Below are positions 1 through 57,420 of a stretch of DNA of 64,000 nucleotides, piece by piece (position 1 is the stretch's first letter; the number at the start of each line of letters is the position of its first letter). Made by a program: the position numbers and the translations under genes. The notes below the pieces were generated by a model. The model saw nothing but the letters and a program-made list of their open reading frames with translations, did no database searches and was not told where the DNA came from. The stretch spans positions 282,857-346,856 of IMG/VR virus record IMGVR_UViG_3300027759_000045; one strand, written 5' to 3'.

Positions 1-179
1 TTTGATCCATATTCTTCAAGATTCCAACATTTTTGACACGCCGAACTTTTAACTCCTGATAACAAGTCTGATTTAATTTGATCAATGTTGTAATTTCGAG
101 GTAGTAAACAGCAATGTGTTTCTTGGCCATTCCAAACTACTTCTTTTCCTACCCAGGGTAAAACACAAAATGTATCCAT
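1..179 (-). CDS. Radical SAM/Twitch-domain protein, N-terminal part (runs off window start)
   Basis: Manual translation MDTFCVLPWVGKEVVWNGQETHCCLLPRNYNIDQIKSDLLSGVKSSACQKCWNLEE matches the FCxxPW..CC..CxxCW..E N-terminus of the other radical SAM genes here; TAAATA at 184-189 on the minus strand. Confidence 0.8.
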   Translation of the reverse strand, partial: MDTFCVLPWVGKEVVWNGQETHCCLLPRNYNIDQIKSDLLSGVKSSACQKCWNLEEYGS

Positions 180-241
180 CTTTTATTTAAGTATAATGTA
201 TGTTAGAATCAAATAAATAACACAAAGGGTTCGGGACCAAA

Positions 242-490
242 ATGCAGAAGAAAACTCGTAGTTTATTAGAAGAATTAGACAGCATGTATGTGGAGCGCGA
301 CTCCCGCTATGTTATCGAAAATCGTGCTGGTAACATCATAGCCAGTGCTATACGCCTGCTAGAGCAGATTGACTCCAGTTATGAGCCCGAGGTGGCTAAA
401 AATTTGCAACGAAAGTTGATCAATGCTATCAACCTACGCGACCCTGGCAAATTTACAAGAACCGTGAGAAAAACTGATGCAAATTCATGA
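242..490 (+). CDS. Hypothetical phage protein (82 aa)
   Basis: ORF track; TAAATA at 214-219; overlaps the next gene. Confidence 0.7.
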   Translation: MQKKTRSLLEELDSMYVERDSRYVIENRAGNIIASAIRLLEQIDSSYEPEVAKNLQRKLINAINLRDPGKFTRTVRKTDANS

Positions 491-1964
491 GTTAAATCGT
501 CCACGTCGCACTGACGAAGGTGTTTGGGATGTGGTAAAAGGTGTTGGCAAAGCTGCCGCTACTGGACTCGCCCAAGCTGTATCTCCTGGAGCAGGAACAA
601 CGCAAGACTTCAGGGCATCAAGTGCAGGTATCCTTGATCCTGTAAAAAAATTAGCCGCTGTAAAGGCAAATTCAGCAATGGTCAAACTGGCAACAGAGTA
701 TGCTGATGCATGGTTAACAGATAAAAGATCACAAGTGTCGGCAGCTCCTGCACCTGCTCCTGCTCCTGCACCTGCGGCAGCTCCTGCTCCTGCACCTGCG
801 GCTGGTAAATTAACTCCAGCACAACAAAATGCATTGAAAGACAAATTGAAAGGGCAACGAGGCGCTGGCAAAACAACTGCCACCCAGACCGGCTCGGGAT
901 TCAAAGACTATGTTAGCGGAAGTCAAAACAAGTTAATTACCAATCCAGATGGTAGTACTTCAATGAAGAAACTACAGCGTGAATCAAACTATTATAATTT
1001 TGATTACATCTTAGAAAGCATTATTAACATCAACGAAAAAGCCGCAGTGGCCAATCAGCCTGTTACCAAACCAGCACCTGCCACTGGCAACGCTCAAGGA
1101 TTCAATTACAACAACGTGATGAAGATGCCGGGCATGGAAAAATATGCCACACCTGCAGGTCAGCCAAAGCCAGGACAGCCACCTGCAGGTCAGCCAAAGC
1201 CAGGGCAACCACCTGCAGGGCAACCCGATACTGACGCACAACCACCTGCAGGGCAACCAACGCCAGGGCAACCACCTGCTGGACAAGCACAACCACCTGC
1301 TGATGCAGGTGCCGGAGCAATGGGTGCTATGGCAGGACAACTAGCCAAAGGTGGAGCAGCAGGACCAAACACAATGGCTAATGCTCCAGTAAGCAAAACA
1401 AATAAAGCCAAGCCTGGAAATCCAAATGCCGGACAAGCACAACCACCTGACAATCCTGAATATATTAAAAACTTCTTAGAGTTTGCCAATGAAAAAGTTG
1501 CCATGCGCGATTCAGCCACGTACAAAATGCTTGGATTAACAGACGCTGAAGGATCTGAATTAGGGCCAGAGTTAGATGATGCCAAGCAAGCAGTTATTGA
1601 TGCCCAGGGCAATCCTGCCAACACTAAAACAGCAGTTAAAAATTATATTTTAACTGCTATGGCCGCACTACAACTGGTGACATCACAAAATTCTGTGAAG
1701 GCCGCATCACCCGAAGCACCTGCATATGGACAGCAACCACCACCGGCAGCCGGCACCACTGGAGCAGCCGCTGGCACTGCACCGGCTACAGGTCAATTGA
1801 CAGGAGCCAGTGCAGTGAAATTGTTAAACGATGCCGGGTTGACTGCTCAAATTTTAACCACAGCCGGGAAAAAAATTCAGGCCGCCACCGGCAACAAAAA
1901 ACTATCTACCTCAGGTGATTCGGTGATTGACACCATGCTACAAGGTATGGGATACACTGTATGA
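477..1964 (+). CDS. Pro/Ala/Gln-rich low-complexity protein, candidate internal head protein
   Basis: 495 aa; N-terminus MQIHEL; AP and PAGQP repeats. Confidence 0.7.
   Translation: MQIHELNRPRRTDEGVWDVVKGVGKAAATGLAQAVSPGAGTTQDFRASSAGILDPVKKLAAVKANSAMVKLATEYADAWLTDKRSQVSAAPAPAPAPAPAAAPAPAPAAGKLTPAQQNALKDKLKGQRGAGKTTATQTGSGFKDYVSGSQNKLITNPDGSTSMKKLQRESNYYNFDYILESIININEKAAVANQPVTKPAPATGNAQGFNYNNVMKMPGMEKYATPAGQPKPGQPPAGQPKPGQPPAGQPDTDAQPPAGQPTPGQPPAGQAQPPADAGAGAMGAMAGQLAKGGAAGPNTMANAPVSKTNKAKPGNPNAGQAQPPDNPEYIKNFLEFANEKVAMRDSATYKMLGLTDAEGSELGPELDDAKQAVIDAQGNPANTKTAVKNYILTAMAALQLVTSQNSVKAASPEAPAYGQQPPPAAGTTGAAAGTAPATGQLTGASAVKLLNDAGLTAQILTTAGKKIQAATGNKKLSTSGDSVIDTMLQGMGYTV
741..803 (+). repeat. 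Ala-Pro coding microrepeat
   Basis: gcwcct units encoding AAPAPAPAPAPAAAPAPAPAA. Confidence 0.85.
1152..1301 (+). repeat. Degenerate 30-bp tandem repeat (PAGQPKPGQP)
   Basis: Repeated cctgcaggtcagccaaagccagg / cctgcagggcaacc units. Confidence 0.85.
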
Positions 1965-3829
1965 TATTAAAAGAAGGCGGCAATGTTTTTAAAGACGCAA
2001 ATGGCCGTATACTAACACAGCGCATTAACCAAGCAGACGTTGCTCCCACACTCGCCTGGCTTGACCAAATGTTACCGGGCCTGGATCTACAAGACAATAC
2101 ATTAGGCTCCACAGGTAGAAAACCCACGTCGGGCGATTTGGATCTGGCAGTGGATGCCAATCAAGTCAGCAAAGAACAGTTGGTTACACGGCTGACACAA
2201 TGGTGTCAAAGCCATGGTTTCAAACCAGAAGACTACATTAAAAAGTCCGGCATTTCTGTACACTTTAAAACGCCCATCACTGGTAACCCCAATTCAGGTT
2301 ATGTGCAAACAGACTTTATGTTCTTGACTAATTTACCTTTTTCTAAATTTGTACTAAGTGCGCCTGCAGACAGTGCGTATCGTGGGCAAGACCGTAATGT
2401 GTTGATGAACAGCATTGCCAAAAGCATGGGTTACAAACTAAATCAAACTGCAGGCATTGCTGACCGTGCCACCAACAAGGTTATCACGGATGACCCGGAT
2501 AAGATTGCTCGACTGTTGTTGAATAAACAAGCAACTCGAGCAGACTTGAACAGTGTAGAAACCATTGTGGCCGCACTGGAAAATGATCCCAAGCGTGATG
2601 CCAAGCTGGCAGATGCACGTGAACACTTTGCCAAGATTGGCGTTCCTTTCATGGAAAGTGAAGAACCCTTATATAAAGAATACAACGAAGTGAACTTCTT
2701 GGCTCGACTGCGTGATCGCATTGTGAATCAAGGCATGTCAGTGATTGTGGAAGGCGCCAAGGATGCACGTATTGAACACCTGGAAGATCTAGTGTTTGAA
2801 AAAGGCACACGTGGTATTCGTGATGCAGTTGAAATCATGCGCCACGCCGCAGAAGACACACGCGGTACTACCACAGTGAAGTGGGATGGCAAGCCTGCTA
2901 TCATATTTGGCCGCAAGCCAGATGGCACGTTTGTGCTCACAGACAAAAGTGGATTTGGCGCCAAAGGATATGACGGCTTGGCCACATCTCCGGATCATAT
3001 TGCTAGAATGATGGCCATGCGGTCGGGAGATCGTACAGAGTTAATTGGGCTTTATCAAAAGTTGTTTCCATTGTTACGTGCTGCCACCCCAGACAACATG
3101 CGTGGGTTTGTACAGGGTGATTTACTGTACACCAACACACCTCCTGAACAGGCCGGCGCTTATGTGTTCCAGCCAAATTTTGTTGAATACAAGATACCTG
3201 CCAGCAGTAAACTGGGACAACGCATTGGCCGCAGTGAAGTGGGCGTGGCTGTACACACACGATATCGTGATGTTGATGCCGCTCCTGAAGCAATCAAACA
3301 GGTCACACTGAATGAAGTTCCGGGACTGTTGCTGATTGAGCCCAGTGTCAAAGACATTCGCAACGTTGAATTAAACAGTGGCCTAGTTAAACAGCTGAGT
3401 CAAATTGTGTCCACACAAGGCACTGCCATTGACAGTTTGTTCAACCCTGCTGACCTACGTGCTGCCGGCATTACTGATTTGCCACAGTTGTGCAAACGCT
3501 ACATCAACTCTAGAATTACCAGCAACTACGACAACTTGCTGAACGGCTTTGGAGACTGGCTAAAAACCAATGTAACACCACGCAAGTTCAACAACATTGT
3601 GGAATATCTGCAAAGTCCACGCACAAACATGGCGGGCATCACTTCGGCATTCACTGCATTCCTGTTGTTGCACGACATCAAAACAGACATGCTAGGGCAG
3701 TTAGATCGCCAACAGCCCGGGCAAGAAGGCTGGGTACTGGCCACCCCTGCAGGCCGTGCCAAACTGGTAAATCGCTTTGGATTCAGTGCCGGAAATCGTG
3801 CCCTAAACAATCCAGATCAAACAGCCTAA
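1961..3829 (+). CDS. Fusion of Pol-beta-type nucleotidyltransferase and DUF6267-like RNA-ligase-type adenylation domain
   Basis: N-half GSTG..SGDLDLAVD..QTDF; C-half KWDG, QGDLLY, EGWV, KLVN ligase motifs. Confidence 0.75.
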   Translation: MILKEGGNVFKDANGRILTQRINQADVAPTLAWLDQMLPGLDLQDNTLGSTGRKPTSGDLDLAVDANQVSKEQLVTRLTQWCQSHGFKPEDYIKKSGISVHFKTPITGNPNSGYVQTDFMFLTNLPFSKFVLSAPADSAYRGQDRNVLMNSIAKSMGYKLNQTAGIADRATNKVITDDPDKIARLLLNKQATRADLNSVETIVAALENDPKRDAKLADAREHFAKIGVPFMESEEPLYKEYNEVNFLARLRDRIVNQGMSVIVEGAKDARIEHLEDLVFEKGTRGIRDAVEIMRHAAEDTRGTTTVKWDGKPAIIFGRKPDGTFVLTDKSGFGAKGYDGLATSPDHIARMMAMRSGDRTELIGLYQKLFPLLRAATPDNMRGFVQGDLLYTNTPPEQAGAYVFQPNFVEYKIPASSKLGQRIGRSEVGVAVHTRYRDVDAAPEAIKQVTLNEVPGLLLIEPSVKDIRNVELNSGLVKQLSQIVSTQGTAIDSLFNPADLRAAGITDLPQLCKRYINSRITSNYDNLLNGFGDWLKTNVTPRKFNNIVEYLQSPRTNMAGITSAFTAFLLLHDIKTDMLGQLDRQQPGQEGWVLATPAGRAKLVNRFGFSAGNRALNNPDQTA

Positions 3830-3850
3830 ACCTGATTTTTTGTCAACTTG

Positions 3851-3858
3851 TATAAATA
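3851..3858 (+). promoter_or_regulatory. T4-type late promoter TATAAATA
   Basis: Exact T4 late consensus upstream of AAGGAG SD and the ATG at 3900. Confidence 0.8.
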
Positions 3859-3899
3859 ATTGCAGGTCCAACGTGACCATATACTAAGGAGATTTAAAA

Positions 3900-4310
3900 A
3901 TGGCTTATATTACACAAGTAAACGGCAACTTCGAACCAGTTGTTAATCAAGACTCAGGCACAGTTGCCGCATCACCTGGCGCAGGCTGGAACAGTGGTGC
4001 TAACACAGTGACCAGTGGCACAACAGTTAACGTTGCAGGCCCTAAGTTAGACTTCGGTACAGTTACTTTCACTGGTAACGCTACTGTAAGTGGTACTTCA
4101 TTGGGACAAGCATTCTTGACAATTCAGACACAATGCACAATTGCTATGTACGAATTCACAACCAACAGTAGTAACACTGCTACATTGGCTCTGGCTACAT
4201 ACCCAACTGGTGCATGGAACTATGCTAACGGTCAAGATCTAGACGTGGCATTGACTGCCGCTCTAGGCTATGCTGTTACCACAGCTGCCACAGCAACATT
4301 CACAAACTGA
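3900..4310 (+). CDS. Probable abundant virion structural/decoration protein (136 aa)
   Basis: Late promoter, strong SD, own terminator; Thr/Ala/Gly/Asn-rich, beta-strand-like composition. Confidence 0.65.
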   Translation: MAYITQVNGNFEPVVNQDSGTVAASPGAGWNSGANTVTSGTTVNVAGPKLDFGTVTFTGNATVSGTSLGQAFLTIQTQCTIAMYEFTTNSSNTATLALATYPTGAWNYANGQDLDVALTAALGYAVTTAATATFTN

Positions 4311-4330
4311 TCTAAACAGTTTTTGAAACA

Positions 4331-4363
4331 AAAACCCTGGAATAAAACCCAGGGTTTTCTTTT
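4331..4363 (+). terminator. Rho-independent terminator
   Basis: AAAACCCTGG-aataaaac-CCAGGGTTTT followed by ctttt. Confidence 0.85.
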
Positions 4364-4381
4364 GACGTTAAATACTTCATC

Positions 4382-4636
4382 ATGATGGTGAGCAAAATAA
4401 CTGAAGTAACAATATTTGAAAGCCCCGATGGTGGCCGCACAGTGTATGCTCGCCAACCTGGCAGTAGCGCAAGATCCTTGCACTATCAAGACCCCAAACT
4501 AAAACAAGAACTAGAAGATCTTGAAAACAAACGTCGTTGGGCAGAAATATTTGAATCACGTCACAACAGTGTAGCACTCAACGAACTATGCAACAAAGTT
4601 GAAGTGTTATACGAACTAATTAAAAAGACGCCATGA
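4382..4636 (+). CDS. Hypothetical protein (84 aa)
   Basis: ORF track; TAAATA 7 nt before ATG. Confidence 0.75.
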   Translation: MMVSKITEVTIFESPDGGRTVYARQPGSSARSLHYQDPKLKQELEDLENKRRWAEIFESRHNSVALNELCNKVEVLYELIKKTP

Positions 4637-5082
4637 GATTTGTAGTACAAACATTCTTTGACATCACTGCCACCGGCGTCACAGGACATTATAAACCTGC
4701 CCGGGTGCCGTTCCGAGATCACGCAGGCAATGTAATAACCGACGAGTTAGACTGGGGTCGTGCTAGAAATCAACAAAGAAACTGGGAAACACTCACACAA
4801 ATACTGGGACTACGTACACAGTTGTTCCGCATACAAGAACCCATGGTGGATGCATCAAATCGTGCATGGATGTTTGAATTTGAAACAGAAACTGACAACA
4901 TCTACGGCACAGATGATGATTTAACCTTGGTACTACGTGCAGATGCCGAAGGTGTGCCCATGCTGTTAGGACTGGACAATAGACCAGAAATGTCCACTGT
5001 GCTGATTACACATGGCCCCCAACAGAACATATGGTTCGCTCCGATCGCCATAAATAATGCATTGGAGACCCAACATGGTTGA
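4633..5082 (+). CDS. Hypothetical protein (149 aa)
   Basis: ATGA overlap with the upstream gene. Confidence 0.75.
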   Translation: MRFVVQTFFDITATGVTGHYKPARVPFRDHAGNVITDELDWGRARNQQRNWETLTQILGLRTQLFRIQEPMVDASNRAWMFEFETETDNIYGTDDDLTLVLRADAEGVPMLLGLDNRPEMSTVLITHGPQQNIWFAPIAINNALETQHG

Positions 5083-5338
5083 TACCACTGCTATTGAGAA
5101 AAAAAGTCTAGAAGCACACGTAGAACTGTGTGCAGAACGTTATAGTCAATTGGAACTGCGGTTAGATAACGTAGACTCTAAAATTGCCAGCCTGGAACAG
5201 ATGGTTGCACAGATACGTGATATGGTCAGAGACATGGCTGCCAAACGCAACGACCAATTGATTTCATGGGGTCTAGGTGCAATGGGCTCAATGGCCGCGG
5301 TCATTGGATGGCTGCTTGTGACTTATGTTTTTAAATGA
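5075..5338 (+). CDS. Coiled-coil protein with C-terminal TM helix (XhlA/holin-like topology)
   Basis: TAAATA at 5051 and GGAG SD favour ATG 5075; heptad region then ISWGLGAMGSMAAVIGWLLVTYVF. Confidence 0.65.
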   Translation: MVDTTAIEKKSLEAHVELCAERYSQLELRLDNVDSKIASLEQMVAQIRDMVRDMAAKRNDQLISWGLGAMGSMAAVIGWLLVTYVFK

Positions 5339-5832
5339 AAATAGATAAAGAAATTTCTCGAGAAATCCTTAAAGAATTCCCCACACTAGAACACAACAGT
5401 ATCTGGAAAAATTCTGATGGCGACTACACAGTATTTGGAAAATACAGTATTGTCAAAGAAAGTCAAGGCTACCGAGTACACTGTGCCTTAACTGATGTTG
5501 GCGTTTTTCACACTACTAAATCAGCATTGAGTTGGTGCATTGCCGACAAATTTAAACAATACAATGTGGCCCGCGATTTAATGCAGTTAGACAACAGTTT
5601 ACATCATTTAACCGTGGATATCGGCACCAGAGCCGCCATTGGTGATCGCACCAAAAATGCTGATCAACGTGAAATCATTCTAACCAAGTTAGAAAATAAG
5701 ATTTTAAAGAAAAAAGAAATAGAAAATAGATTAGCCAAATGTGTGAATTGGGCTAAATATTATCAACAACGAGGATTCGATAATGAAACTGCAAGAATTG
5801 GCCGTACTGCCGCAATCAAAACAAGTCGCTAA
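5335..5832 (+). CDS. Hypothetical protein (165 aa)
   Basis: ATGA overlap with the upstream gene. Confidence 0.7.
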   Translation: MKIDKEISREILKEFPTLEHNSIWKNSDGDYTVFGKYSIVKESQGYRVHCALTDVGVFHTTKSALSWCIADKFKQYNVARDLMQLDNSLHHLTVDIGTRAAIGDRTKNADQREIILTKLENKILKKKEIENRLAKCVNWAKYYQQRGFDNETARIGRTAAIKTSR

Positions 5833-6673
5833 AGTATTCGAAAGTTACTTTGGTAAAAGCATTACCTTTGAATCAATTTCAAAGCGTCAAGCACATGCCA
5901 TGTTAGGCCGTGTGCGTGGCTTACTGGGCGAACATCGCCGTACACCTGCATTCCATAAGAGCGAACAAGATTCAGCATACTTGAAATTAGTAATGCTAGA
6001 GCAGGTGTTGGCTAAAAAAATCAAAGAAGAGATTCCAGCGAACACAACAATGGGAATGCCAGATCCTAACAAAACAAAACAAGCTCTCAGTAAGATCACT
6101 GATCCTAAACTCAAGTCAGCAATGACCAAGAGTGCTGCCGGTCAAACGCTGTCACCAGACGAACAAAAGATGGTACAAGGTGCCGCATTATCTGCCGCCA
6201 TGGCCGCTGAAAGTCGTCGTAAAACAGGCCGTCGATTAGCCGAGAGCGAAGTACAACAAGCACAGGTTATCTTGGCCAGTCAAGACATGGTTGATCAAGT
6301 TCAGCGCATGATTGAACAAGTTACTTCTATTCAGTTCAAAGATTTGCCAGCCTTGGTTGATCAAATCCGTAACGAAATTGGCTATGACCAAGCTACCAAA
6401 TTCAATGCAGATGCCACAGCCGCACTGGGCGGAATGGTACAGAACCTACAGCAATCTAAGATTCAATTAGAAACTGCCATGGGCACAGTGACCGGACAAG
6501 CACCTGTGGTTCCGGGCGAAGTGGCTCCTGATGTTGGTGCAGAAATGCCTCCAATGGACGCTGGTGCAGAAATGCCTGCTGAACCCGGTGATGAACTAGA
6601 TGCACTGGCTGCCGATGCAGAAGCAGACCTCGAAGAGCCTGTTAAAACTGGACTAGGTCGCGAGCGTAGATAA
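5783..6673 (+). CDS. Helical acidic protein, candidate prohead core/scaffold-like
   Basis: MKLQEL N-terminus, coiled-coil composition, acidic Pro-rich tail. Confidence 0.6.
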   Translation: MKLQELAVLPQSKQVAKVFESYFGKSITFESISKRQAHAMLGRVRGLLGEHRRTPAFHKSEQDSAYLKLVMLEQVLAKKIKEEIPANTTMGMPDPNKTKQALSKITDPKLKSAMTKSAAGQTLSPDEQKMVQGAALSAAMAAESRRKTGRRLAESEVQQAQVILASQDMVDQVQRMIEQVTSIQFKDLPALVDQIRNEIGYDQATKFNADATAALGGMVQNLQQSKIQLETAMGTVTGQAPVVPGEVAPDVGAEMPPMDAGAEMPAEPGDELDALAADAEADLEEPVKTGLGRERR

Positions 6674-7014
6674 TGCGCCTACGAGAGTTTGACGAGTCTG
6701 CCAACAGCGCCCTTAAACTAGCGGCGCTGAGTCAGTTTCTCAGCGACAGAGCTGAAGACGAAGCAGCCTCAAAACAAATTAGTCAAGCAGCCTTTGTTGA
6801 CTTGGCACAGTCAATGGGTGTTAACGTAACTGAACAGAACCTAGGTGACATGATCAGCCGTGAACCATTGAGCAACTTGCTTGAACCACTTGAGCCAAAT
6901 TCGGGTGTGGTTAGATTCAAAGGCAACACCGAAGCCACAACAGGCATGAGTGTTGATCAAGCACGTGAAGTTGTTGACAGCAATGCCAAAGCAGCCTTGA
7001 AGCGTCGCCAATAA
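6673..7014 (+). CDS. Hypothetical protein, candidate head protein (113 aa)
   Basis: MRLREFDE N-terminus; TAATG overlap. Confidence 0.65.
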   Translation: MRLREFDESANSALKLAALSQFLSDRAEDEAASKQISQAAFVDLAQSMGVNVTEQNLGDMISREPLSNLLEPLEPNSGVVRFKGNTEATTGMSVDQAREVVDSNAKAALKRRQ

Positions 7015-7051: not shown

Positions 7052-7945
7052 ATGACACAAAAAATCTTGATTGACAAGTTAGAATTCTACATCACCAACG
7101 TGTGTAACTTAACTTGCAACGGCTGTAATCGCTACAACAATTATAAATTCAGCGGATGGCAAAGTTGGGCAGAAGCCGAACCTGTTCTCACTCGCTGGGC
7201 AGAAAAAATAGACATACGACATCCTGTAATCCTTGGTGGCGAGCCACTGCTTAATCCTGACATTGTTAAATGGATTAACGGTATTAGGCAATTGTGGCCC
7301 AAGCATTCGGGAGTTCAAGTGCAAAGCAACGGAACACGCATCGACTGCGTTAAAGGGTTAGATGAGGCTCTTAATCCTAAAGAGGGAAACTGGTTGGGCA
7401 TTAGTATACACAATCCCAATGACCGAGAAGAAATATTTGCTCGTGTACGAAACTTCTTAGGACCTACTGTAATAGAAACACAACGCAAAGATGATCCAAT
7501 TGGTAGCAATTATCAATTTATTAATGATAAAAAATTAACAATCCACGCCTGGATGAGCAACAAGTTTGTTCAAAGCAATATTATTGAACTTCCAGACAAC
7601 AAGTACACACTGTATCAGAGTGATCCTACACGGGCACACGAAAACTGTACCTTCCGTAGATTTAAAAACTATCACATGATCAATGGGAAAATCTACAAGT
7701 GCGGTCCAGCCGCTCTAATGCCCGAATTTGATGATCAATACCATTTTGAAATAAGCGATGAGGATCGTGCTATGCTACACAGCTATCGACCGTTGACCAT
7801 TGATGAGTTTGATCTACGTGGCAAAGAGTTTATTGACACGATTGATAACCAAATTGATCAATGCAAGTTTTGCCCAGAATCATACGAATACAAACCCATC
7901 ACATTCAGTGATCGTAAAAAACCCTGGATAAAAGAACCAAAATGA
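7052..7945 (+). CDS. Radical SAM protein
   Basis: TNVCNLTCNGC (CxxxCxxC), GGEPLL, C-terminal auxiliary Cys residues. Confidence 0.9.
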   Translation: MTQKILIDKLEFYITNVCNLTCNGCNRYNNYKFSGWQSWAEAEPVLTRWAEKIDIRHPVILGGEPLLNPDIVKWINGIRQLWPKHSGVQVQSNGTRIDCVKGLDEALNPKEGNWLGISIHNPNDREEIFARVRNFLGPTVIETQRKDDPIGSNYQFINDKKLTIHAWMSNKFVQSNIIELPDNKYTLYQSDPTRAHENCTFRRFKNYHMINGKIYKCGPAALMPEFDDQYHFEISDEDRAMLHSYRPLTIDEFDLRGKEFIDTIDNQIDQCKFCPESYEYKPITFSDRKKPWIKEPK

Positions 7946-8339: not shown

Positions 8340-8543
8340 ATGGCATTAGGTAAAGTAAAGTGGTTTAATGAAACCAAAGGTTTTGGGTTTATTACTCCAG
8401 ACGAAGGTGGCGAAGAATTGTTTGCACACTATTCAGCAATTCAAACGCAAGGCTTCAAAGTCCTCAAAGAAAATCAACGTGTGACATACGATGTGGTTCA
8501 AGGACAAAAGGGCCTGCAGGCATCTAACATTAAACCAGAGTAA
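8340..8543 (+). CDS. cspA: Cold-shock protein
   Basis: [15 protein letters not shown] (RNP1), ELFAHYSAI (RNP2). Confidence 0.95.
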
Positions 8544-8549
8544 ACACAC

Positions 8550-8942
8550 ATGTCTTACAGCAAAAAGGTGGTCGATCACTATGAAAATCCCAGGAATGTC
8601 GGATCTTTTGACAAGACTGATACTGATATTGGTACTGGTATGGTTGGCGCACCTGCTTGCGGGGATGTCATGAAATTACAAATAAAGGTTGATAATGATA
8701 CAGGTATTATTACAGATGCAAAATTTAAAACGTATGGCTGCGGATCGGCTATTGCGAGCTCGAGCCTTATTACAGAGTGGGTCAAAGGCATGCACATCGA
8801 CCAAGCAGGAGCAATCAAAAACTCCGACATCGCTGAAGAATTGGCCTTACCCCCCGTGAAGATACATTGTAGCATTCTAGCCGAAGACGCAATCAAAGCG
8901 GCTGTGGACGACTATCGTAAGAAGCATGATCTCGTTAACTGA
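8550..8942 (+). CDS. iscU: Fe-S cluster scaffold IscU
   Basis: DHYENPRNVG, GAPACGD, FKTYGCGSA, LPPVKIHC. Confidence 0.95.
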   Translation: MSYSKKVVDHYENPRNVGSFDKTDTDIGTGMVGAPACGDVMKLQIKVDNDTGIITDAKFKTYGCGSAIASSSLITEWVKGMHIDQAGAIKNSDIAEELALPPVKIHCSILAEDAIKAAVDDYRKKHDLVN

Positions 8943-9246
8943 TGCTGCCGCTCGAAAAATACAACAAACAATAACTCGGCGTGGGCACGGTGAAGGAATA
9001 AGATTAGGTGTTAGAACCACTGGGTGTTCTGGACTTGCTTATGTGTTAGAATATGTGGATACACCGCAAGCAACAGATCAATGTTTTGACTGTACTGGTT
9101 GCCGAGTGTTTGTTGATCCCAAGTCTGGTGCTTACTTACAAGGTGTAACAGTTGACTATGTTCGCCAAGGGCTCAATGAAGGTTTTGAATTTCGCAATCC
9201 AAATGAACGTGATCGGTGTGGATGTGGAGAAAGTTTCCGTATTTAA
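8926..9246 (+). CDS. iscA: A-type Fe-S carrier IscA
   Basis: TTGCSG and CGCGESF motifs. Confidence 0.95.
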   Translation: MISLTDAAARKIQQTITRRGHGEGIRLGVRTTGCSGLAYVLEYVDTPQATDQCFDCTGCRVFVDPKSGAYLQGVTVDYVRQGLNEGFEFRNPNERDRCGCGESFRI

Positions 9247-10090: not shown

Positions 10091-11374
10091 ATGATTACCC
10101 AAACAATTGAATGGATTAAAAATAATCCTACATTTTGCACAGCACCATATTCTGCCTACGATTTTAGATTCAACGTTGGCAAATTTAAAGTTACTACGTG
10201 CTGTAATTTAGACGTGTCCAAGACCAACCAAGCACTGGATTTTAATTTTATAGAAAACGTCAAACAAGACATGTCACAAGGACTAGTGCCCAAGGCTTGT
10301 TGGCGTTGTGCGTCCGAAGAACAAAACCAAGCACAGTCTGAACGTGTAAAGTACATGCTAGGACACACCGTTGCTGAATTAGAACAGTTTAAGGAAAATA
10401 AAAAAACAAACGAATTTCAAGTTGGTATGAAGTTTAGCAATCTTTGCAACTTAGCTTGTCGTAGTTGTAACGAAACTGACAGTAGTTTATGGGCCAAATT
10501 AATGAATACGCCTGCGCCTCCTGAATATGAAATTGACACGTCAACAGACCAGTTTCTTTGGGATCAAATGACCAATATGATTCGTTCTAAACATAAAGAA
10601 ACTGATAATTTCATTGTACATCCAATTGGCGGAGAAACAATGATTCAACCAGGATTTTTAAAATTAGTTGATTGGTTGATTGAAGAAAATTTAGCCAACA
10701 CCACTACACTACGAATTACCACCAGTCTTGTGCCCAGTATATCTGAAAAGTTTTCTGCAAAATTTGCACAGTTTCGCCGCATAGAATTTCTTTCCAGCAT
10801 CGACAGCATTGGAGAAAATTATCATTACGTCCGTTGGCCTGCCAGGTTCAACAAAATAGAAGATAACCTGGAAACATTCAATCTGTTGAGTCGGCAATAT
10901 CCTGGCAAATTTTCCTTGTCGGTCAGCCCGGTATTTTCATTAAATAACATTTTTTATGCAGTGGACTATCTTGATTGGTGGAAACGCTGGGCCGACCAAA
11001 CACAAACTGATTTATGGATGTCAAACATACACTTGTATAATCCTGAGCCATTGATGGTGGAAAGTTTATCATTACAATACTACCCGCAACTGATTGAACT
11101 GTTAGAGCAATGTGTAAACCACACAGTATTTAAAAAATACACACGCACTGCTGTGCTGAAAGAATTCTTTGTTGCCATGCTTGCAACAATTTCTAATAAC
11201 AAAAACAACAACAACGAGTTGCGTTTTCAAGAGTACCTGAAGTTCACTGCAGATTATGATAATCGCACAACCACCGATAGCTACACCTTAAATTCTAAAC
11301 TGTTTGATTTACTGTCAGACTCCCATAAACATATATACAACTCTCATTTGCAACATGTACAATCCAAAATTTAA
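10091..11374 (+). CDS. Radical SAM protein with N-terminal Twitch-like domain
   Basis: FCTAPY..CC..CWRC then SNLCNLACRSC, GGET. Confidence 0.9.
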   Translation: MITQTIEWIKNNPTFCTAPYSAYDFRFNVGKFKVTTCCNLDVSKTNQALDFNFIENVKQDMSQGLVPKACWRCASEEQNQAQSERVKYMLGHTVAELEQFKENKKTNEFQVGMKFSNLCNLACRSCNETDSSLWAKLMNTPAPPEYEIDTSTDQFLWDQMTNMIRSKHKETDNFIVHPIGGETMIQPGFLKLVDWLIEENLANTTTLRITTSLVPSISEKFSAKFAQFRRIEFLSSIDSIGENYHYVRWPARFNKIEDNLETFNLLSRQYPGKFSLSVSPVFSLNNIFYAVDYLDWWKRWADQTQTDLWMSNIHLYNPEPLMVESLSLQYYPQLIELLEQCVNHTVFKKYTRTAVLKEFFVAMLATISNNKNNNNELRFQEYLKFTADYDNRTTTDSYTLNSKLFDLLSDSHKHIYNSHLQHVQSKI

Positions 11375-31051: not shown

Positions 31052-32251
31052 ATGATCTCTAAAACAACACCTACACATTGTAATTTTTGTAACAAGCACA
31101 AAGACCAAGTGGGCAAACTGATTGTAGGACACAATGTTGGTATATGCAACGAGTGTGTGGAATTCTGTCACGGGCTGTTGCTGTCAAAAGAACATGCTGT
31201 AAAATCTACTGTACAGTCTGTACTAGACCCACGTGAGATACACCAGTACCTGGATCAATATGTGATTGGACAGTCCGGTGCCAAGATTGTGTTAAGTGTA
31301 GCAATTACCAATCACTACAAACGAATTGGTAATCCAGATCCCCAAAACGAAATACAAAAAGCCAACATCTTAATGACTGGGCCAACCGGCACAGGTAAAA
31401 CACTTATGGCTCGCACAGTGGCCCGGTACTTGGATGTGCCGTTTGTTATTGCAGACGCCACAACACTGACAGAAGCAGGATATGTAGGTGACGATGTTGA
31501 CAGTTTAATTGCTAGACTATTCCATGCCAGCGGCAACGATGTTGAACGCACACAACGTGGAATTGTGTTCCTAGACGAAGTAGATAAGATTGCTCGCAAA
31601 GGTGAAAGTAGTACTGTATCACGTGATGTGAGTGGCGAAGGTGTTCAACAAGCACTGCTTAAACTGATCGAAGGCACACGATGTAAAGTGCCAAATCAAG
31701 GAGTGCGCAAAACATCCAGCAGTGAAACAATTGACATTGACACTGCCAACATACTGTTTATTGTAGGTGGTGCATTTGTTGGACTAGACAAAGTGATCAA
31801 AGCACGTACACAAGGCACGTCGATTGGGTTTGGCGCCAGCACTGTCAAAGAAAATGTATCCGAAGCAATCACACCCGACGATTTAGTACGTTATGGAATG
31901 ATTCCAGAGTTTGTGGGACGGTTCCCATCTATTATACAGTTGGAAGAACTAACTAAATCTCAACTTATTACTATTTTGACAGAAGTAAAAAACAACTTGG
32001 TCAGTCAGTACAGATGGTTGTTTAACCAGGATGGTGTGGCCCTGGACTTTGATGCCGACAGTATAGACCTAATTGCAGAACGCACAATCACCACAAAAAC
32101 TGGTGCTCGTGGATTACACACAGAACTCGAACGTGTACTCTTGCCCCATATGTACAACTTAAAAGATTATCAGTCTCGCAATATTTTAAAAATTGCCATT
32201 GATAAAACACAAGTTACTACTCCTATCCGATTAGAACAACAAAATTCGTAA
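31052..32251 (+). CDS. clpX: ClpX ATPase
   Basis: C4 zinc domain, GPTGTGKT, DEVDKI, RDVSGEGVQQALLK, IGF loop. Confidence 0.95.
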   Translation: MISKTTPTHCNFCNKHKDQVGKLIVGHNVGICNECVEFCHGLLLSKEHAVKSTVQSVLDPREIHQYLDQYVIGQSGAKIVLSVAITNHYKRIGNPDPQNEIQKANILMTGPTGTGKTLMARTVARYLDVPFVIADATTLTEAGYVGDDVDSLIARLFHASGNDVERTQRGIVFLDEVDKIARKGESSTVSRDVSGEGVQQALLKLIEGTRCKVPNQGVRKTSSSETIDIDTANILFIVGGAFVGLDKVIKARTQGTSIGFGASTVKENVSEAITPDDLVRYGMIPEFVGRFPSIIQLEELTKSQLITILTEVKNNLVSQYRWLFNQDGVALDFDADSIDLIAERTITTKTGARGLHTELERVLLPHMYNLKDYQSRNILKIAIDKTQVTTPIRLEQQNS

Positions 32252-52800: not shown

Positions 52801-53376
52801 ATGGCCACACAGCAAGATTTTGACACCGTTAAAGACCACACACAAGCACTAGCAGATAATGGCATGTACGTTTTCATGGGCGAAGTAGACCATGAAAGTA
52901 TAAAGCCTGCAATCGAATGGATTCTGCACGAGAACTTTGTTGTAAAGAGAAAACGCAAAGAACTGTTGTTGATGATCTGTTCAGAGGGCGGAGACATGAG
53001 TGCTGCCTTTGCCCTGATTGATGTGATGCGCAGTTCCAACATATTCATTAAGACTGTGGGCCTGGGTCAGATTGCCAGTGCTGGCCTGTTGATCTTTTTA
53101 GCAGGATCCCCGGGTCGTAGAACACTCACCCCCAACACTAGTATCATGAGTCATCAGTATGCCTGGGGTAATGATGGCAAGCATCACGAGTTAATGGCCA
53201 CAATGAAAGAGTTTGATCTCACACAAAAGCGCATGGTTGCACACTATGTGCAGTGTACAGGATTATCAGAAGAAGAAATCAAACGAACATTGTTGCCAGC
53301 ACACGATGTGTATCTCAGTGCAGAAGAAGCCTTGAAGCTTGGCATCTGCGACAACATCTCTATACTAAATCGTTAA
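52801..53376 (+). CDS. Divergent ClpP-family protease
   Basis: CSEGGD, IASAG (Ser), MSHQ (His). Confidence 0.85.
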   Translation: MATQQDFDTVKDHTQALADNGMYVFMGEVDHESIKPAIEWILHENFVVKRKRKELLLMICSEGGDMSAAFALIDVMRSSNIFIKTVGLGQIASAGLLIFLAGSPGRRTLTPNTSIMSHQYAWGNDGKHHELMATMKEFDLTQKRMVAHYVQCTGLSEEEIKRTLLPAHDVYLSAEEALKLGICDNISILNR

Positions 53377-54818
53377 CGCTGACGCTTGCGTCCCAGCGTT
53401 TTATCGTTACCAATCTGCACAGGTTTTGCAGGTTCTACCGTTTCTTCAACTGCACCAGTGGGACTTAATTTAAAATTAAACCCTCCGCCTCCTGGGTCTA
53501 CAGCACTGCTTTTATTTTCCATAGTAATCTTGCCATCTAGTTTGGCTGGCCACTGTGTGTTAAACACAAGAGAACCCGATTTTCTCACTAAACTTGTGTA
53601 CTGCTGAATAAAATTATAATCTAAAATTTCTAAAACAGCAGCCTGAAATTCTGGAACAGCACCGCTATTAACAATATTCTTCACAGCCTGTTTAGTAACA
53701 TAAGTTAATTTGCCGCCGTCGGTGCCGGTACTATCGACCATGCTGGTTATTTTTTTGTACTTGGGAAGATCAACTCGTTGGCTTCTTGGTGCAAGTCTAC
53801 TTGCATTTATTTCATCAACGATTGATGACGGCCATGGCAAGAAAGGTTTAAACACCGCAGGAATAGACTCTGGAATCCGTTCGTTTAACAGATTCATTGC
53901 TTGGAATGCCTGACTGATTGCAGTAGGTTTAGGTAAATTTGCATTTTGCGTCAAATCAATTAGGTCAATTGCAGTACGGTATGATTTTTTCTTTCTAAGA
54001 TGATCCGGAATACGTAAGCCACTCACTGCTGGTGATGCGCCACCGCCAGTGCCTTTACTAGAAATGTTGATTTGATGATTGGTGGTAGGGTTAGTAATCT
54101 CAGCAATACTGTCGGCCAGTGGATTATTTTCTTTACTTGGAAAATTTAAAATTAAACTGTCAAGACTTCCGCCCAGCCACTTGGTAAAATCTGCTTGATT
54201 GGGAAAATTAGTTCGACCGTAGATCAGGGCCAGCACGCCTAGATATTCTCCAGCATAGTCAACAATGGCAGCAGTTACAGGCCCTGATGCTAAAATTTCT
54301 TTAGGGATCACTGGAGTTTGCCCGGCTATGATTGCCTTGGCACAGGCAACGACTGCCTGGCCGTGCGGTGTACTATTTAGAATTGGGTTGTTGATGATGA
54401 CCCGACCAAGTTGACCTGCTTTGATCGGTTGGTCAGTAATGCCAATCTGATTGGGCTTTAAGCCAGCAGCATCTTTGCTGAGCTTGCTAGCATCATCATC
54501 GGGTTTAGCAGTGGCTCCACCGAAGTCAGCAGTTTTACTAAAGCTACTCAATGGCCAGATGTTTCCTTTGGCATCAGTGCCGGTTAATCCACCTTTAAAT
54601 TTGTTTTCTCTTGCTAGTGCTAAAAAGCGTTCAGCCTCTGAAGGGTCTAGTATAACTTCGGTTCCCTTGGGGAACCCGTTAACATCTTTGTCAAGATAAA
54701 ATGGCTTGCCATTTGCAATATGTCCAATGAAGGCATTAAACCGATCTTCATACTTGTTAATCTCACCGGCTGATAATGCCACTTCGTGAAGGTCAATTAA
54801 ATTAAGTAGGTCGCGCAT
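53373..54818 (-). CDS. Hypothetical protein with possible PD-(D/E)XK fold
   Basis: MRDLLNLIDLHE start; PLADSIAE..NISSKG. Confidence 0.6.
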   Translation of the reverse strand: MRDLLNLIDLHEVALSAGEINKYEDRFNAFIGHIANGKPFYLDKDVNGFPKGTEVILDPSEAERFLALARENKFKGGLTGTDAKGNIWPLSSFSKTADFGGATAKPDDDASKLSKDAAGLKPNQIGITDQPIKAGQLGRVIINNPILNSTPHGQAVVACAKAIIAGQTPVIPKEILASGPVTAAIVDYAGEYLGVLALIYGRTNFPNQADFTKWLGGSLDSLILNFPSKENNPLADSIAEITNPTTNHQINISSKGTGGGASPAVSGLRIPDHLRKKKSYRTAIDLIDLTQNANLPKPTAISQAFQAMNLLNERIPESIPAVFKPFLPWPSSIVDEINASRLAPRSQRVDLPKYKKITSMVDSTGTDGGKLTYVTKQAVKNIVNSGAVPEFQAAVLEILDYNFIQQYTSLVRKSGSLVFNTQWPAKLDGKITMENKSSAVDPGGGGFNFKLSPTGAVEETVEPAKPVQIGNDKTLGRKRQR

Positions 54819-56796: not shown

Positions 56797-57420
56797 ATGC
56801 CTAATTTAGTACCTATTGTTCTAGAACAAACTGCCAAAGGCGAACGTTCATATGACATCTACAGTCGACTGCTACGTGACCGTGTGATCATGCTGGACAC
56901 AGAAGTCAGCGAACATTCAGCCAGTTTAATTGTGGCACAGATGCTGTTCTTGGAAAGCGAAAATCCTGACAAGGATATCTCATTGTACATCAATTCACCT
57001 GGCGGTGCTGTCACAGCCGGCCTGGCCATTTACGATACCATGCAGTTTATCAAATGCGATGTACAGACCATTGTGCTGGGCCAGGCTGCAAGTATGGGAT
57101 CCATGTTGGCACAAGCAGGTGCCGCAGGTAAACGTATGGTGCTACCCGAAGCACGTACAATGATACACCGTGTGAGTTCTGGCACACCGGGCACACGTGG
57201 TTCAGTTCATGTGCAGGATCTGCAGTTCGAAGATTCAAAACGTGCGTTTGAAGAAAGTGTACGAATAAATAAACGTCTTACCGAGCTGTACGTCAAGCAC
57301 AACACCGCCAGCAAGACCTATGAAGAACTGTATGAAACTATGAAGTTTGATACATTCTTAAGCGCACAGCAAGCAGTTGATTTTGGACTTGCTGATAAAA
57401 TTATTGAAAAACGAGTTTAA
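56797..57420 (+). CDS. clpP: ClpP protease
   Basis: [35 protein letters not shown]. Confidence 0.95.

What the first reader, a model, noticed from the sequence alone, without database searches (positions are those of the whole stretch)
242..7014. Late gene block whose N-termini resemble T4 capsid-targeting and prohead-protease signals
Seen: MQIHEL (477), MILKEG (1961), MKLQEL (5783), MRLREF (6673), SLLEEL (242), and MRDLLNLIDLHEV (53373). Similar sites recur at domain junctions: ILES/LQRES in 477, FMESEE..IVEG between the two domains of 1961, and LAESE in 5783. Established: T4 internal proteins carry a capsid-targeting sequence (e.g. MKTYQEFIAE) and gp21 cleaves after (I/L)-x-E. Inference: these are packaged, processed and ejected head proteins, the cargo that acts first on infection.
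Basis: partly seen in the sequence, partly recalled or inferred. Interest (0 to 1): 0.6.

Follow-up and report, generated by a model that had tools for sequence, protein, structure and literature searches.

The report
Protease-cut leaders on jumbo-phage virion proteins
A cluster of late genes in an uncultured 347-kb T4-related jumbo phage encodes proteins whose first 5-10 residues end in the (I/L)-x-E signature cut by T4-type head proteases, so they are probably trimmed, head-packaged proteins, a known T4 mechanism seen here in a new phage group.

Summary
The named N-termini are all present, and four M-x-(I/L)-x-E starts fall within ten adjacent genes (scan permutation p≈0.003).

The window is the last 64 kb of a 346,856-bp RaK2/PA5oct-type jumbo phage. 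The genome has a T4-like head module that includes a Peptidase_S77 (gp21-type) prohead protease.

Evidence for a functional signal:
- Across about 80 related metagenomic loci, P3 (I/L) and P1 (E) are invariant, while P2 takes up to 7 residues and P3 uses 6-7 different codons. Selection therefore acts on the protein.
- The same signature starts the phage's own capsid protein, protease and gp67-position protein.
- The scaffold protein has 16 such sites where 2.7 are expected.
- Homologues of ORF5783, ORF6673, ORF477 and the N-half of ORF1961 were detected by mass spectrometry in PA5oct and/or RaK2 virions.
- In PA5oct the motif is about 4-fold enriched among MS-detected proteins (p=0.019).

Internal sites LAE-154 (ORF5783) and FME-232/IVE-264 (ORF1961) lie in predicted disordered linkers.

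Still unproven: cleavage itself, targeting and ejection. ORF1961, a PolX-like domain fused to DUF6267, may instead be a replication or repair enzyme. Four genes in the block lack the signal.

Verdict: a new member of a known kind, of moderate interest.

The parts
213..219 (+). ATAAATA, the core of a T4-type late promoter, 22 nt upstream of the ORF242 start
   Evidence: Sequence. The heptamer lies within 60 nt upstream of 29 gene starts genome-wide, against 1.8 expected, and these include tail tube, wedge and neck genes. A homologue of the gp55-like late sigma factor is present in the genome.
242..490 (+). ORF242, 82 aa, basic. It belongs to the PHROG 11854 'virion structural protein' family. 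The predicted 10-residue leader ends in LLE-10.
   Evidence: PHROG match at E 2e-15. Homologues follow the DnaB helicase in PA5oct (gp259), Vibrio phage 2.275.O and RaK2 (ORF129). [SN]-[LI]-L-E-E-L is invariant in the window's relatives, PA5oct and the Vibrio phage. RaK2 has NLLDS instead.
477..1964 (+). ORF477, 495 aa, low-complexity, with PA and PGQP-type repeats. Leader is MQIHE.
   Evidence: MQIHEL is invariant in orthologues of 38-74% identity. Tandem repeats lie at 744-802 and 1150-1290. It occupies the position of PA5oct gp258 (MS-detected, starts MKKVFE) and shares a short PEY[IV]K.FL stretch with it by eye; phmmer found no match.
1961..3829 (+). ORF1961, 622 aa. It has a leader MILKE, a PolX-like nucleotidyltransferase domain (about residues 6-232), a disordered linker (233-271) and a DUF6267 domain (271-612).
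   Evidence: Pfam DUF6267 at E 9e-37. AF2 model. Domain 1 matches Pol beta with Z 9.6 over 163 aa and ASFV PolX with Z 8.5 (Foldseek). Orthologues read M-x-[IL]-x-E-GGN, with 7 residues at P2 and 7 codons at P3. One orthologue has a 7-residue leader, MSTSLFE.
2648..2752 (+). Interdomain linker of ORF1961, bounded by FME-232 and IVE-264, the candidate internal cleavage sites
   Evidence: Both sites are invariant in 28 orthologues. The linker has pLDDT of about 28. By eye, IVE-264 lines up with the N-terminal MNIAE of the separate DUF6267 gene gp256 of PA5oct, which starts MNIAEI and then has IKHLDNL where the window has IEHLEDL. The PolX-like half corresponds to PA5oct gp253, which was MS-detected.
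3851..3858 (+). Exact TATAAATA, the T4 late-promoter consensus, 41 nt upstream of ORF3900
   Evidence: It is the only exact match in the window and lies in the 1961/3900 intergenic gap.
3900..4310 (+). ORF3900, 136 aa, acidic, with no N-terminal (I/L)-x-E
   Evidence: No family match.
4382..4636 (+). ORF4382, 84 aa, with five (I/L)-x-E sites including ITE-8 and IFE-13. It is a candidate small core protein that is cut into pieces.
   Evidence: 5 sites against 0.6 expected, the third-highest density in the genome after the scaffold. ITE-8 is 90% conserved and IFE-13 is 100% conserved.
4633..5082 (+). ORF4633, 149 aa, with no leader signal
5050..5056 (+). ATAAATA abutting the first ATG of ORF5057. 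The true start is probably Met7, at 5075.
5057..5338 (+). ORF5057, 93 aa, a coiled coil with a C-terminal hydrophobic segment. No leader signal.
5335..5832 (+). ORF5335, 165 aa, basic, with no conserved leader signal
   Evidence: the hydrophobic P3 is conserved in only 34% of orthologues.
5783..6673 (+). ORF5783, 296 aa. It has a leader MKLQE, a basic N-half (pI 10.1), the site LAE-154, an acidic helical-hairpin C-domain (155-236) and a disordered acidic tail ending in LGRxRR.
   Evidence: PHROG 14154 'virion structural protein' matches residues 151-267. Alignment A2. In the AF2 model, residues 1-9 and 141-149 have low confidence and the hairpin 153-236 is confident. Charge. Homologues PA5oct gp247 (MS) and RaK2 gp135 (MS, 36% coverage, 7 peptides; Table S3 of PMC3622015).
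6236..6244 (+). LAE-154 of ORF5783, a candidate maturation cleavage site just before the conserved C-domain
   Evidence: L and E are invariant and P2 takes 6 residues. Variants reading RLRE|ASE keep L-x-E with a shifted register. The same site reads KLNE|NEV in PA5oct, KLFE|SEI in Vibrio 2.275.O and QINE|SNI in RaK2. The RaK2 protein starts only 24 residues before it.
6673..7014 (+). ORF6673, 113 aa, acidic. Leader is MRLRE, followed by a second site FDE-8.
   Evidence: Orthologues read M-[RLK]-[LI]-x-E-[FV], with 7 residues at P2, 6 codons at P3 and both GAA and GAG at P1. The positional counterparts are PA5oct gp246 (MS; MKIKDILVE), RaK2 ORF136 (MKFRDIVKITE) and Vibrio (MRYKDLCE). phmmer found no match for these, so the correspondence rests on position and N-terminal pattern.
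53373..54818 (-). 481-aa ORF starting MRDLLNLIDLHEV (LHE-12). It lies outside the block, between two ClpP genes.
   Evidence: No family match and no homologue among PA5oct MS proteins. Its link to the block is unsupported.

Best explanation
The block 242-7014 is a late-transcribed cluster of fast-evolving accessory virion proteins in a RaK2/PA5oct-type jumbo myophage that builds a T4-like head.

ORF242, 477, 1961, 5783 and 6673, and probably ORF4382, carry a very short N-terminal leader of 5-10 residues ending in (I/L)-x-E. This is the P3-P1 signature cut by T4 gp21.

The most likely mechanism has three steps:
1. The proteins are built into the prohead core.
2. The phage's own Peptidase_S77 protease removes the leaders. 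It also cuts ORF5783 after LAE-154 and ORF1961 within its disordered interdomain linker (FME-232, IVE-264).
3. The mature fragments stay inside the DNA-filled head.

Shown:
- The protease gene is present.
- The motif is under protein-level selection.
- The motif is present on the phage's bona fide head proteins.
- Homologues are present in purified virions of two cultured relatives.

Inferred:
- Cleavage itself.
- A capsid-targeting role for the leader, by analogy with T4 IPs and Alt.
- Any ejection into the host.
For: Genome context:
- The genome has Peptidase_S77 (E 1.5e-25) and Gp23, in the T4 order portal, small protein, acidic protein, protease, scaffold, capsid protein.
- The nearest capsid proteins are those of PA5oct, Vibrio 2.275.O and Phosso.

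Selection on the motif:
- In orthologues from 80 IMG/VR loci, P3 and P1 are invariant while P2 and position 2 vary freely.
- P3 uses 6-7 synonymous or I/L codons, and P1 uses both GAA and GAG.
- A variant with a 7-residue leader keeps L-F-E directly before the conserved GGN.

Internal controls in the same genome:
- Scaffold: 16 sites against 2.7 expected, p=3e-8, the highest density in the genome. The protease ranks 4th.
- Capsid protein: L-x-E at 5-7, and LKE just before the mature core, both conserved in PA5oct.
- The gp67-position protein starts MILNEL.

T4's own head proteins read the same way:
- gp67 MEGLIE, gp24 MAKINELLRE, gp21 LIE-9.
- Alt loses 6 residues at ITE-6 (PMC5694885).

Virion evidence from relatives:
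- PA5oct gp258, gp253, gp247 and gp246 are MS-detected.
- RaK2 gp135 is MS-detected.
- In PA5oct, 6 of 93 MS proteins start with the strict motif against 6 of 368 others (odds ratio 4.2, p=0.019). Allowing E or D gives 9 of 93 against 9 of 368 (p=0.004).
- In this genome, [IL]-x-E within residues 2-12 is 3.3-fold enriched among genes that have a PA5oct-MS homologue (p=0.0025).

Accessibility and timing:
- The putative sites lie in low-confidence, probably disordered segments.
- Late-promoter-like ATAAATA precedes ORF242, 3900 and 5057.
Against: - There is no direct evidence of cleavage, packaging or ejection for this uncultured phage.
- The PA5oct MS list also contains ribonucleotide reductase, thymidylate synthase, ligase, UvsX and SSB. 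Detection is therefore a noisy proxy for true virion membership.
- About a third of ORF5783 orthologues have Asp at position 5, as do the PA5oct homologue of ORF5783 and the PA5oct, RaK2 and Vibrio counterparts of ORF6673. In T4, Asp at P1 blocks processing (PMC9026906).
- A 5-residue leader is shorter than any documented T4 propeptide.
- PolX-like and DUF6267 genes sit next to primase/helicase. The cyanophage DUF6267 protein has no such leader, and PA5oct gp256 was not MS-detected.
- Four of the ten genes in the block lack the signal.
- Genome-wide, the strict motif alone is only about 2-fold over expectation (9 against 4.9).
Confidence: 0.6

Rival explanations
1. The proteins are head or virion proteins, but the N-terminal M-x-(I/L)-x-(E/D)-hydrophobic element is only a docking or targeting motif. 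It might, for example, bind the scaffold core, and it is not cleaved. Only internal sites such as LAE-154 would be processed, if any are.
For: Asp replaces Glu at position 5 in 33% of ORF5783 orthologues, in PA5oct gp247, gp246 and gp333, and in RaK2 ORF136. In T4, Asp at P1 abolishes processing but keeps targeting (PMC9026906). Position 6 is also conserved as hydrophobic (7 of 9 genes), and gp21 is not known to need that.
Against: ORF1961, 6673 and 477 orthologues keep Glu strictly. The variant MSTSLFE|GGN keeps the distance to the mature part, not the distance to Met1. The same signature is over-represented in the scaffold, which is expected to be degraded.
Confidence: 0.2
2. The block encodes replication, repair or other intracellular proteins that are not packaged. 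The conserved N-terminal element would serve another purpose, for example as a degron or recognition tag for the phage-encoded ClpXP system. MS detection of homologues would reflect co-purifying contaminants.
For: The block lies between primase/DnaB helicase (synteny) and exonuclease/RNR. ORF1961 is PolX-like plus DUF6267. In cyanophage S-CAM9, DUF6267 sits beside primase/helicase and a cytidyltransferase. The window encodes ClpX and two ClpP paralogues. The PA5oct MS list contains many enzymes.
Against: RaK2 gp135 was found independently with 36% coverage. The signature is shared with the capsid protein, the protease and the gp67-position protein, and it matches gp21 specificity exactly. ORF5783, 6673, 242 and 477 have no enzyme-like features, and two of them match PHROG 'virion structural protein' families. 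Late-promoter-like elements precede the operons.
Confidence: 0.12
3. The motif is a chance resemblance that has been kept by shared ancestry among close relatives.
For: Genome-wide, the strict motif is only 9 against 4.9 expected. ORF477's leader is invariant at the DNA level in only 3 distinct sequences.
Against: Codon and P2 turnover with invariant P3 and P1 in ORF1961 and ORF6673. Recurrence in unrelated proteins, and in PA5oct, Vibrio and RaK2 homologues or positional counterparts at or below about 40% identity. Clustering p=0.003. Enrichment among PA5oct MS proteins. Site excess in the scaffold.
Confidence: 0.05

Closest known systems
T4 Alt N-terminal propeptide (ITE-6) and the N-termini of T4 gp67 and gp24
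   Same: A very short N-terminal leader ends in (I/L)-x-E and is removed by the gp21 S77 protease inside the prohead. Alt is a packaged, ejected enzyme that also has an internal C-terminal site, LTE-619 (PMC5694885). T4 gp67 starts MEGLIE and gp24 starts MAKINELLRE.
   Different: The leaders here are 5 residues, against 6-10 in T4. The proteins have no sequence similarity to Alt, gp67 or gp24. Cleavage and ejection have not been shown here.
T4 internal proteins IPI/IPII/IPIII and their capsid-targeting sequence (CTS)
   Same: Small, fast-evolving accessory head proteins carry an N-terminal tag ending in I-x-E. The tag both targets the protein to the scaffold core and is then cut off (PMC9026906). 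ORF242 has a 10-residue leader ending in LLE, the same length as the CTS.
   Different: Most leaders here are half that length, and there is no similarity to MKTYQEFIAE beyond the P3/P1 pattern. A targeting function is untested. The genes lie after the helicase gene and not in an IP-type locus.
Propeptides of phiKZ, 201phi2-1 and SPN3US head and ejection proteins
   Same: These are jumbo phages with a diverged gp21-like protease that processes many inner-head proteins after Glu, including long N-terminal propeptides (PMC9026906, PMC5694885). ORF5783 would lose a 154-residue N-part in the same manner.
   Different: Those phages use S/A-x-E and mostly propeptides longer than 100 residues. This phage belongs to the T4-core RaK2/PA5oct lineage and keeps the T4-type L/I-x-E pattern.
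PA5oct gp259-gp245 and RaK2 ORF129-ORF136 virion-protein clusters
   Same: These are syntenic clusters after primase/helicase. Homologues detected by search are gp259/ORF129 for ORF242, gp253 for the N-half of ORF1961, and gp247/ORF135 for ORF5783. gp246/ORF136 correspond to ORF6673 by position and N-terminal pattern only. Several were detected by virion MS.
   Different: The published analyses did not report leaders or cleavage. In PA5oct the PolX-like and DUF6267 parts are separate genes.

Membership tests
gp21-processed T4-type head proteins (CTS/propeptide class) | The phage encodes a gp21-family (Peptidase_S77) prohead protease | tested here: met
   PF03420 at 87 bits, over the cut-off, at G000 204405-205052. 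It is 54% identical to the PA5oct protease.
gp21-processed T4-type head proteins (CTS/propeptide class) | An N-terminal leader ends in L/I-x-E | tested here: met
   ORF477, 1961, 5783 and 6673 have it at residues 3-5, ORF242 at 8-10 and ORF4382 at 6-8.
gp21-processed T4-type head proteins (CTS/propeptide class) | P3 and P1 are constrained and P2 is free, as expected from the protease's specificity | tested here: met
   The exception is ORF5783, where E alternates with D (67% and 33%).
gp21-processed T4-type head proteins (CTS/propeptide class) | The protein is present in the virion or prohead | tested here: inconclusive
   Only homologues are known. PA5oct gp258, gp253, gp247 and gp246 are MS-detected, and so is RaK2 gp135. 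The PA5oct list also holds evident non-structural enzymes.
gp21-processed T4-type head proteins (CTS/propeptide class) | Demonstrated cleavage after the P1 Glu in mature particles | not testable with these tools
   This needs semi-tryptic or N-terminal proteomics. The published RaK2 search used full tryptic specificity only.
gp21-processed T4-type head proteins (CTS/propeptide class) | The leader is sufficient to target a foreign protein into the head | not testable with these tools
   This needs a fusion experiment in a cultured relative.
T4 IP-type CTS (MKTYQEFIAE) | A leader of about 10 residues with sequence similarity to the IP CTS | tested here: not met
   Four leaders are 5 residues long. 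Only the P3/P1 pattern is shared. ORF242 has 10 residues but no further similarity (CTS as quoted in the finding).
Family X DNA polymerase / Pol beta-type nucleotidyltransferase (ORF1961 residues 6-232) | A palm-plus-thumb fold with a conserved GS...DxD and a third acidic residue | tested here: met
   Pol beta Z 9.6 (rmsd 3.4 over 163 aa) and ASFV PolX Z 8.5. G58, D59, D61 and D118 are invariant in 16 orthologues. Polymerase activity is untested.
Pfam DUF6267 (ORF1961 residues 271-612) | A match over Pfam's gathering score | tested here: met
   127.7 bits against a cut-off of 27. Atlas clusters agree.
ATP-dependent ligase / RNA ligase superfamily (for DUF6267) | Profile similarity to a ligase nucleotidyltransferase domain | tested here: not met
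   A KWDG motif is visible by eye, but hhalign against T4 Rnl2 and against the phage's own DNA ligase gives probability 0.2%. There is no PDB sequence hit and no clear fold match.

The most novel reading that the evidence does not exclude
In RaK2/PA5oct-type jumbo phages, a five-residue tag M-x-(I/L)-x-E would be a portable capsid-targeting and cleavage signal. It would load a changing set of cargo into the head, including a minimal PolX-like polymerase fused to DUF6267. That cargo would be released by cleavage at its linker and ejected with the genome to act on DNA at the start of infection.
Probability: 0.15. Interest if true: 0.65.

Novelty: new member of a known kind. Interest (0 to 1): 0.45.

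Why it matters
If the leaders are real processing and targeting tags, they give a simple sequence rule for predicting the packaged proteome of a large, mostly uncultured clade of T4-related jumbo phages. At least 369 related contigs carry the ORF5783 gene alone.

They would also be the shortest natural tag available for loading foreign proteins into such capsids, as was done with the T4 CTS. The result would flag a PolX-like/DUF6267 enzyme as possible virion cargo.

The idea is directly testable in the cultured relatives PA5oct, RaK2 and Vibrio phage 2.275.O. The underlying mechanism itself is already well known from T4.

Tried and rejected
- DNA search of the block against cultured phages found no match. 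tblastn of ORF5783 also found no match, so homologues were found through ORF242, PHROGs and phmmer instead.
- Complex prediction of the S77 protease with ORF6673 gave 'no answer' (score 0.00). This is not evidence either way.
- Fold search of the ORF5783 model found no significant match, only generic helical hits.
- The DUF6267 domain gave no PDB sequence hit and no convincing fold match. hhalign against T4 Rnl2 and against the phage's DNA ligase was negative. The 'ligase-like' reading of KWDG/EGWV/KLVNR is therefore dropped to a mere impression.
- The sigma-70 promoter scan found nothing on the + strand of the block.
- Exact TATAAATA is rare in the genome, with 8 copies. Only the shorter core ATAAATA is informative.
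- Literature searches for RaK2-group propeptides and for DUF6267 found nothing. The PA5oct supplements are not held, so peptide-level data could not be checked.
- ORF53373 could not be linked to the block or to any virion homologue.
- LQRES in ORF477 is not an (I/L)-x-E site. ILES in ORF477 is conserved in only half of 6 orthologues.


Full report
**What the window is.** The window is the last 64 kb (282,857-346,856) of a 346,856-bp IMG/VR virus record with direct terminal repeats. The genome carries a T4-type head module in the T4 order: portal, a 73-aa protein, an acidic 255-aa protein, a Peptidase_S77 (gp21-type) prohead protease, a 366-aa scaffold-position protein and a Gp23-family major capsid protein. 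The capsid protein is 68-72% identical to those of Sinorhizobium phage Phosso, Vibrio phage 2.275.O and Pseudomonas phage PA5oct. The phage therefore belongs to the RaK2/PA5oct group of T4-core jumbo myophages. A homologue of the gp55-like late sigma factor is present.

**The observation.** ORF477 starts MQIHEL, ORF1961 MILKEG, ORF5783 MKLQEL and ORF6673 MRLREF. ORF242 has SLLEEL at residues 7-12. The minus-strand ORF at 53373-54818 starts MRDLLNLIDLHEV. The internal strings are also present, but LQRES is not an (I/L)-x-E site.

In my crude call of 431 genes, nine start M-x-[IL]-x-E against 4.9 expected. Seven also have a hydrophobic sixth residue against 1.6 expected. Four of the nine lie within ten consecutive genes (permutation scan p=0.003). 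One of the others is the 73-aa gene in the gp67 position, next to the protease (MILNEL).

**Is the motif functional?** I fetched 80 related IMG/VR loci using ORF5783; 369 relatives were found in all. I then compared the orthologues.
- ORF1961 orthologues (62-95% identity) read M-x-[IL]-x-E-GGN. Position 2 and P2 take many residues, and P3 uses seven different I/L codons. One variant has a seven-residue leader, MSTSLFE, which keeps L-x-E directly in front of GGN.
- ORF6673 orthologues read M-[RLK]-[LI]-x-E-[FV]. P2 takes seven residues, P3 uses six codons, and P1 uses both GAA and GAG.
- ORF477 keeps MQIHEL down to 38% identity.
- ORF242 keeps [SN]-[LI]-LEEL even in PA5oct and the Vibrio phage, at 34-42% identity.
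- ORF5783 keeps MKL-x-[E/D]-LA, with Asp in a third of the sequences.

This is selection on the protein, with exactly the pattern of constrained P3 and P1 and free P2 described for T4 gp21 (L/I-x-E; PMC9026906).

**Internal controls within the same genome.**
- The scaffold-position protein has 16 [IL]-x-E sites against 2.7 expected (p=3e-8). This is the highest density in the genome, as expected for a protein that a gp21-like enzyme shreds. The protease itself ranks fourth. The 84-aa ORF4382 inside the block ranks third, with five sites.
- The capsid protein and the protease both start with L-x-E at residues 5-7, and this is conserved in PA5oct.
- The capsid propeptide aligns with T4 gp23's LLEG and IFEN segments. 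It ends in a conserved [YF]-L-x-E-N just before the mature core.
- T4's own head proteins read alike in the T4 record: gp67 MEGLIE, gp24 MAKINELLRE, gp68 MLLIPE and gp21 LIE-9.
- T4 Alt loses only six residues at ITE-6, plus a C-terminal piece at LTE-619 (PMC5694885). Alt, not the 10-residue IP capsid-targeting sequence, is therefore the closest precedent for 5-residue leaders.

**Internal sites.**
- In ORF5783, L-x-E at 152-154 is invariant with six residues at P2. Variants reading RLRE|ASE keep L-x-E in a shifted register.
- The site sits in a low-confidence loop, just before a confidently predicted acidic helical hairpin (153-236). The PHROG 'virion structural protein' match also begins there. 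The N-half is basic (pI 10.1) and the C-half acidic (pI 4.05).
- The same site reads KLNE|NEV in PA5oct gp247, KLFE|SEI in the Vibrio phage and QINE|SNI in RaK2 ORF135. The RaK2 protein begins only 24 residues upstream of it.
- In ORF1961, FME-232 and IVE-264 are invariant and flank a 39-residue linker with pLDDT of about 28. By eye, IVE-264 lines up with the N-terminal MNIAE of PA5oct gp256, where the DUF6267 part is a separate gene.

**Virion evidence from cultured relatives.** The block is syntenic with the genes that follow primase/DnaB in PA5oct, the Vibrio phage and RaK2.
- In PA5oct, gp258, gp257, gp254-249 and gp247-245 are annotated as detected by ESI-MS/MS. This set includes the positional counterpart of ORF477 (gp258), the homologue of the PolX-like half of ORF1961 (gp253), the homologue of ORF5783 (gp247) and the positional counterpart of ORF6673 (gp246).
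- RaK2 gp135 was detected with 36% coverage and 7 peptides (Table S3 of PMC3622015).
- Genome-wide in PA5oct, the strict motif starts 6 of 93 MS-detected proteins against 6 of 368 others (odds ratio 4.2, one-sided p=0.019). With E or D the counts are 9 of 93 against 9 of 368 (p=0.004). gp103, gp104 and gp105 form an adjacent trio that all carry it.
- In the present genome, [IL]-x-E within residues 2-12 is 3.3-fold enriched among genes with a PA5oct-MS homologue (p=0.0025).

Caveat: the PA5oct list also contains RNR, thymidylate synthase, ligase, UvsX and an SSB. Detection is therefore not proof of true packaging. Neither paper analysed cleavage or leaders.

**Late expression.** ATAAATA, the core of the T4 late promoter, occurs 57 times in the genome. 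In 29 cases it lies within 60 nt upstream of a start codon, against 1.8 expected, and these genes include tail tube, wedge and neck genes. In the block it precedes ORF242 (22 nt), ORF3900 (41 nt, as a full TATAAATA) and ORF5057, where it abuts the first ATG. The true start of ORF5057 is therefore probably Met7. 'Late gene block' is thus plausible but inferred.

**What the proteins are.**
- ORF1961 domain 1 is a minimal family-X-polymerase-like nucleotidyltransferase. It matches Pol beta with Z 9.6 and ASFV PolX with Z 8.5, and has an invariant GDLD plus D118.
- ORF1961 domain 2 is DUF6267, which is uncharacterised. My impression of ligase motifs was not borne out by profile comparison.
- In cyanophage S-CAM9 the DUF6267 gene lies after primase/helicase, beside a cytidyltransferase, and has no leader. 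PA5oct gp256 was not MS-detected. ORF1961 is therefore the least secure 'head protein' of the set.
- ORF477 is a repeat-rich, probably disordered protein.
- ORF242, 5783 and 6673 have no enzymatic features.
- ORF3900, 4633, 5057 and 5335 lack the signal.

**Conclusion.** The best reading (about 0.6) is that this is a late cluster of accessory virion proteins. Their short (I/L)-x-E leaders, and some internal linkers, are cut by the phage's gp21-type protease, as for T4 Alt, gp24, gp67 and the IPs.
- A targeting-only, uncleaved motif is the main rival (about 0.2). It is favoured by the Asp variants, since Asp at P1 blocks T4 processing but not targeting.
- A non-virion role, for example recognition by the phage's own ClpXP, is less likely (about 0.12).
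- Chance is unlikely (about 0.05).
- Ejection and 'acting first on infection' remain pure inference.
- The structure-based test of protease-substrate binding gave no answer.

The finding extends a well-known T4 mechanism to a new, largely uncultured jumbo-phage lineage. It is not a new kind of system.

Noticed in passing
Genome-wide; in the window at 213-219, 3851-3858, 5050-5056, and upstream of 18321, 25841, 47837 and others: ATAAATA is 16-fold enriched just upstream of start codons. In about 13 genes it ends only 4-7 nt before the ATG, including the gp67-position gene and the ORF starting at window 47837. This suggests leaderless or near-leaderless late mRNAs, or mis-called starts.
   Followed up: partly
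window 31052-32251, 52801-53376, 56797-57420: The phage encodes a ClpX-type unfoldase (zf-C4_ClpX plus AAA_2) and two ClpP paralogues. One ClpP homologue in PA5oct is annotated 'head maturation protease' and was MS-detected.
   Followed up: partly
window 3-179 (-), 7052-7945, 8340-8543, 8550-8942, 8926-9246, 10091-11374, 35284-36438, 54863-56137: An unusual load of Fe-S biology: IscU (NifU_N), IscA (Fe-S_biosyn) and at least five radical-SAM genes, plus a cold-shock-domain protein.
   Followed up: partly
window 1961-3829; PA5oct gp253/gp256; S-CAM9 (L104 2525-3727): A PolX-like nucleotidyltransferase and DUF6267 are fused here, split in PA5oct, and next to a cytidyltransferase in a cyanophage. 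The Atlas also holds cytidylyltransferase-DUF6267 fusions. DUF6267 therefore seems to work with a nucleotidyltransferase partner.
   Followed up: partly
G000 205055-206155 (outside the window) and window 4382-4636: The scaffold-position protein has 16 [IL]-x-E sites (2.7 expected, p=3e-8). The 84-aa ORF4382 has five (0.6 expected), which makes it a candidate small core protein that is cut into peptides.
   Followed up: partly
window 744-802 and 1150-1290: ORF477 contains in-frame tandem repeats encoding (AP)n and PAGQPKPGQP-type units. Orthologue length varies from 280 to 520 aa.
   Followed up: no
window 5783-5832: ORF5335 and ORF5783 overlap by 50 nt in different frames. The ORF5783 start is supported by a GAGGA Shine-Dalgarno sequence and by conservation of the encoded N-terminus in all orthologues.
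   Followed up: partly
window 6659-6673 (C-terminus of ORF5783): The extreme C-terminus LGR-x-RR is invariant across orthologues, although it follows a highly variable acidic tail. PA5oct gp247 has a related EPLGR.
   Followed up: no
window 53373-54818 (-): A 481-aa ORF of unknown function with LHE-12 near its N-terminus lies between the two ClpP genes on the opposite strand. It has no family match and no PA5oct homologue.
   Followed up: partly
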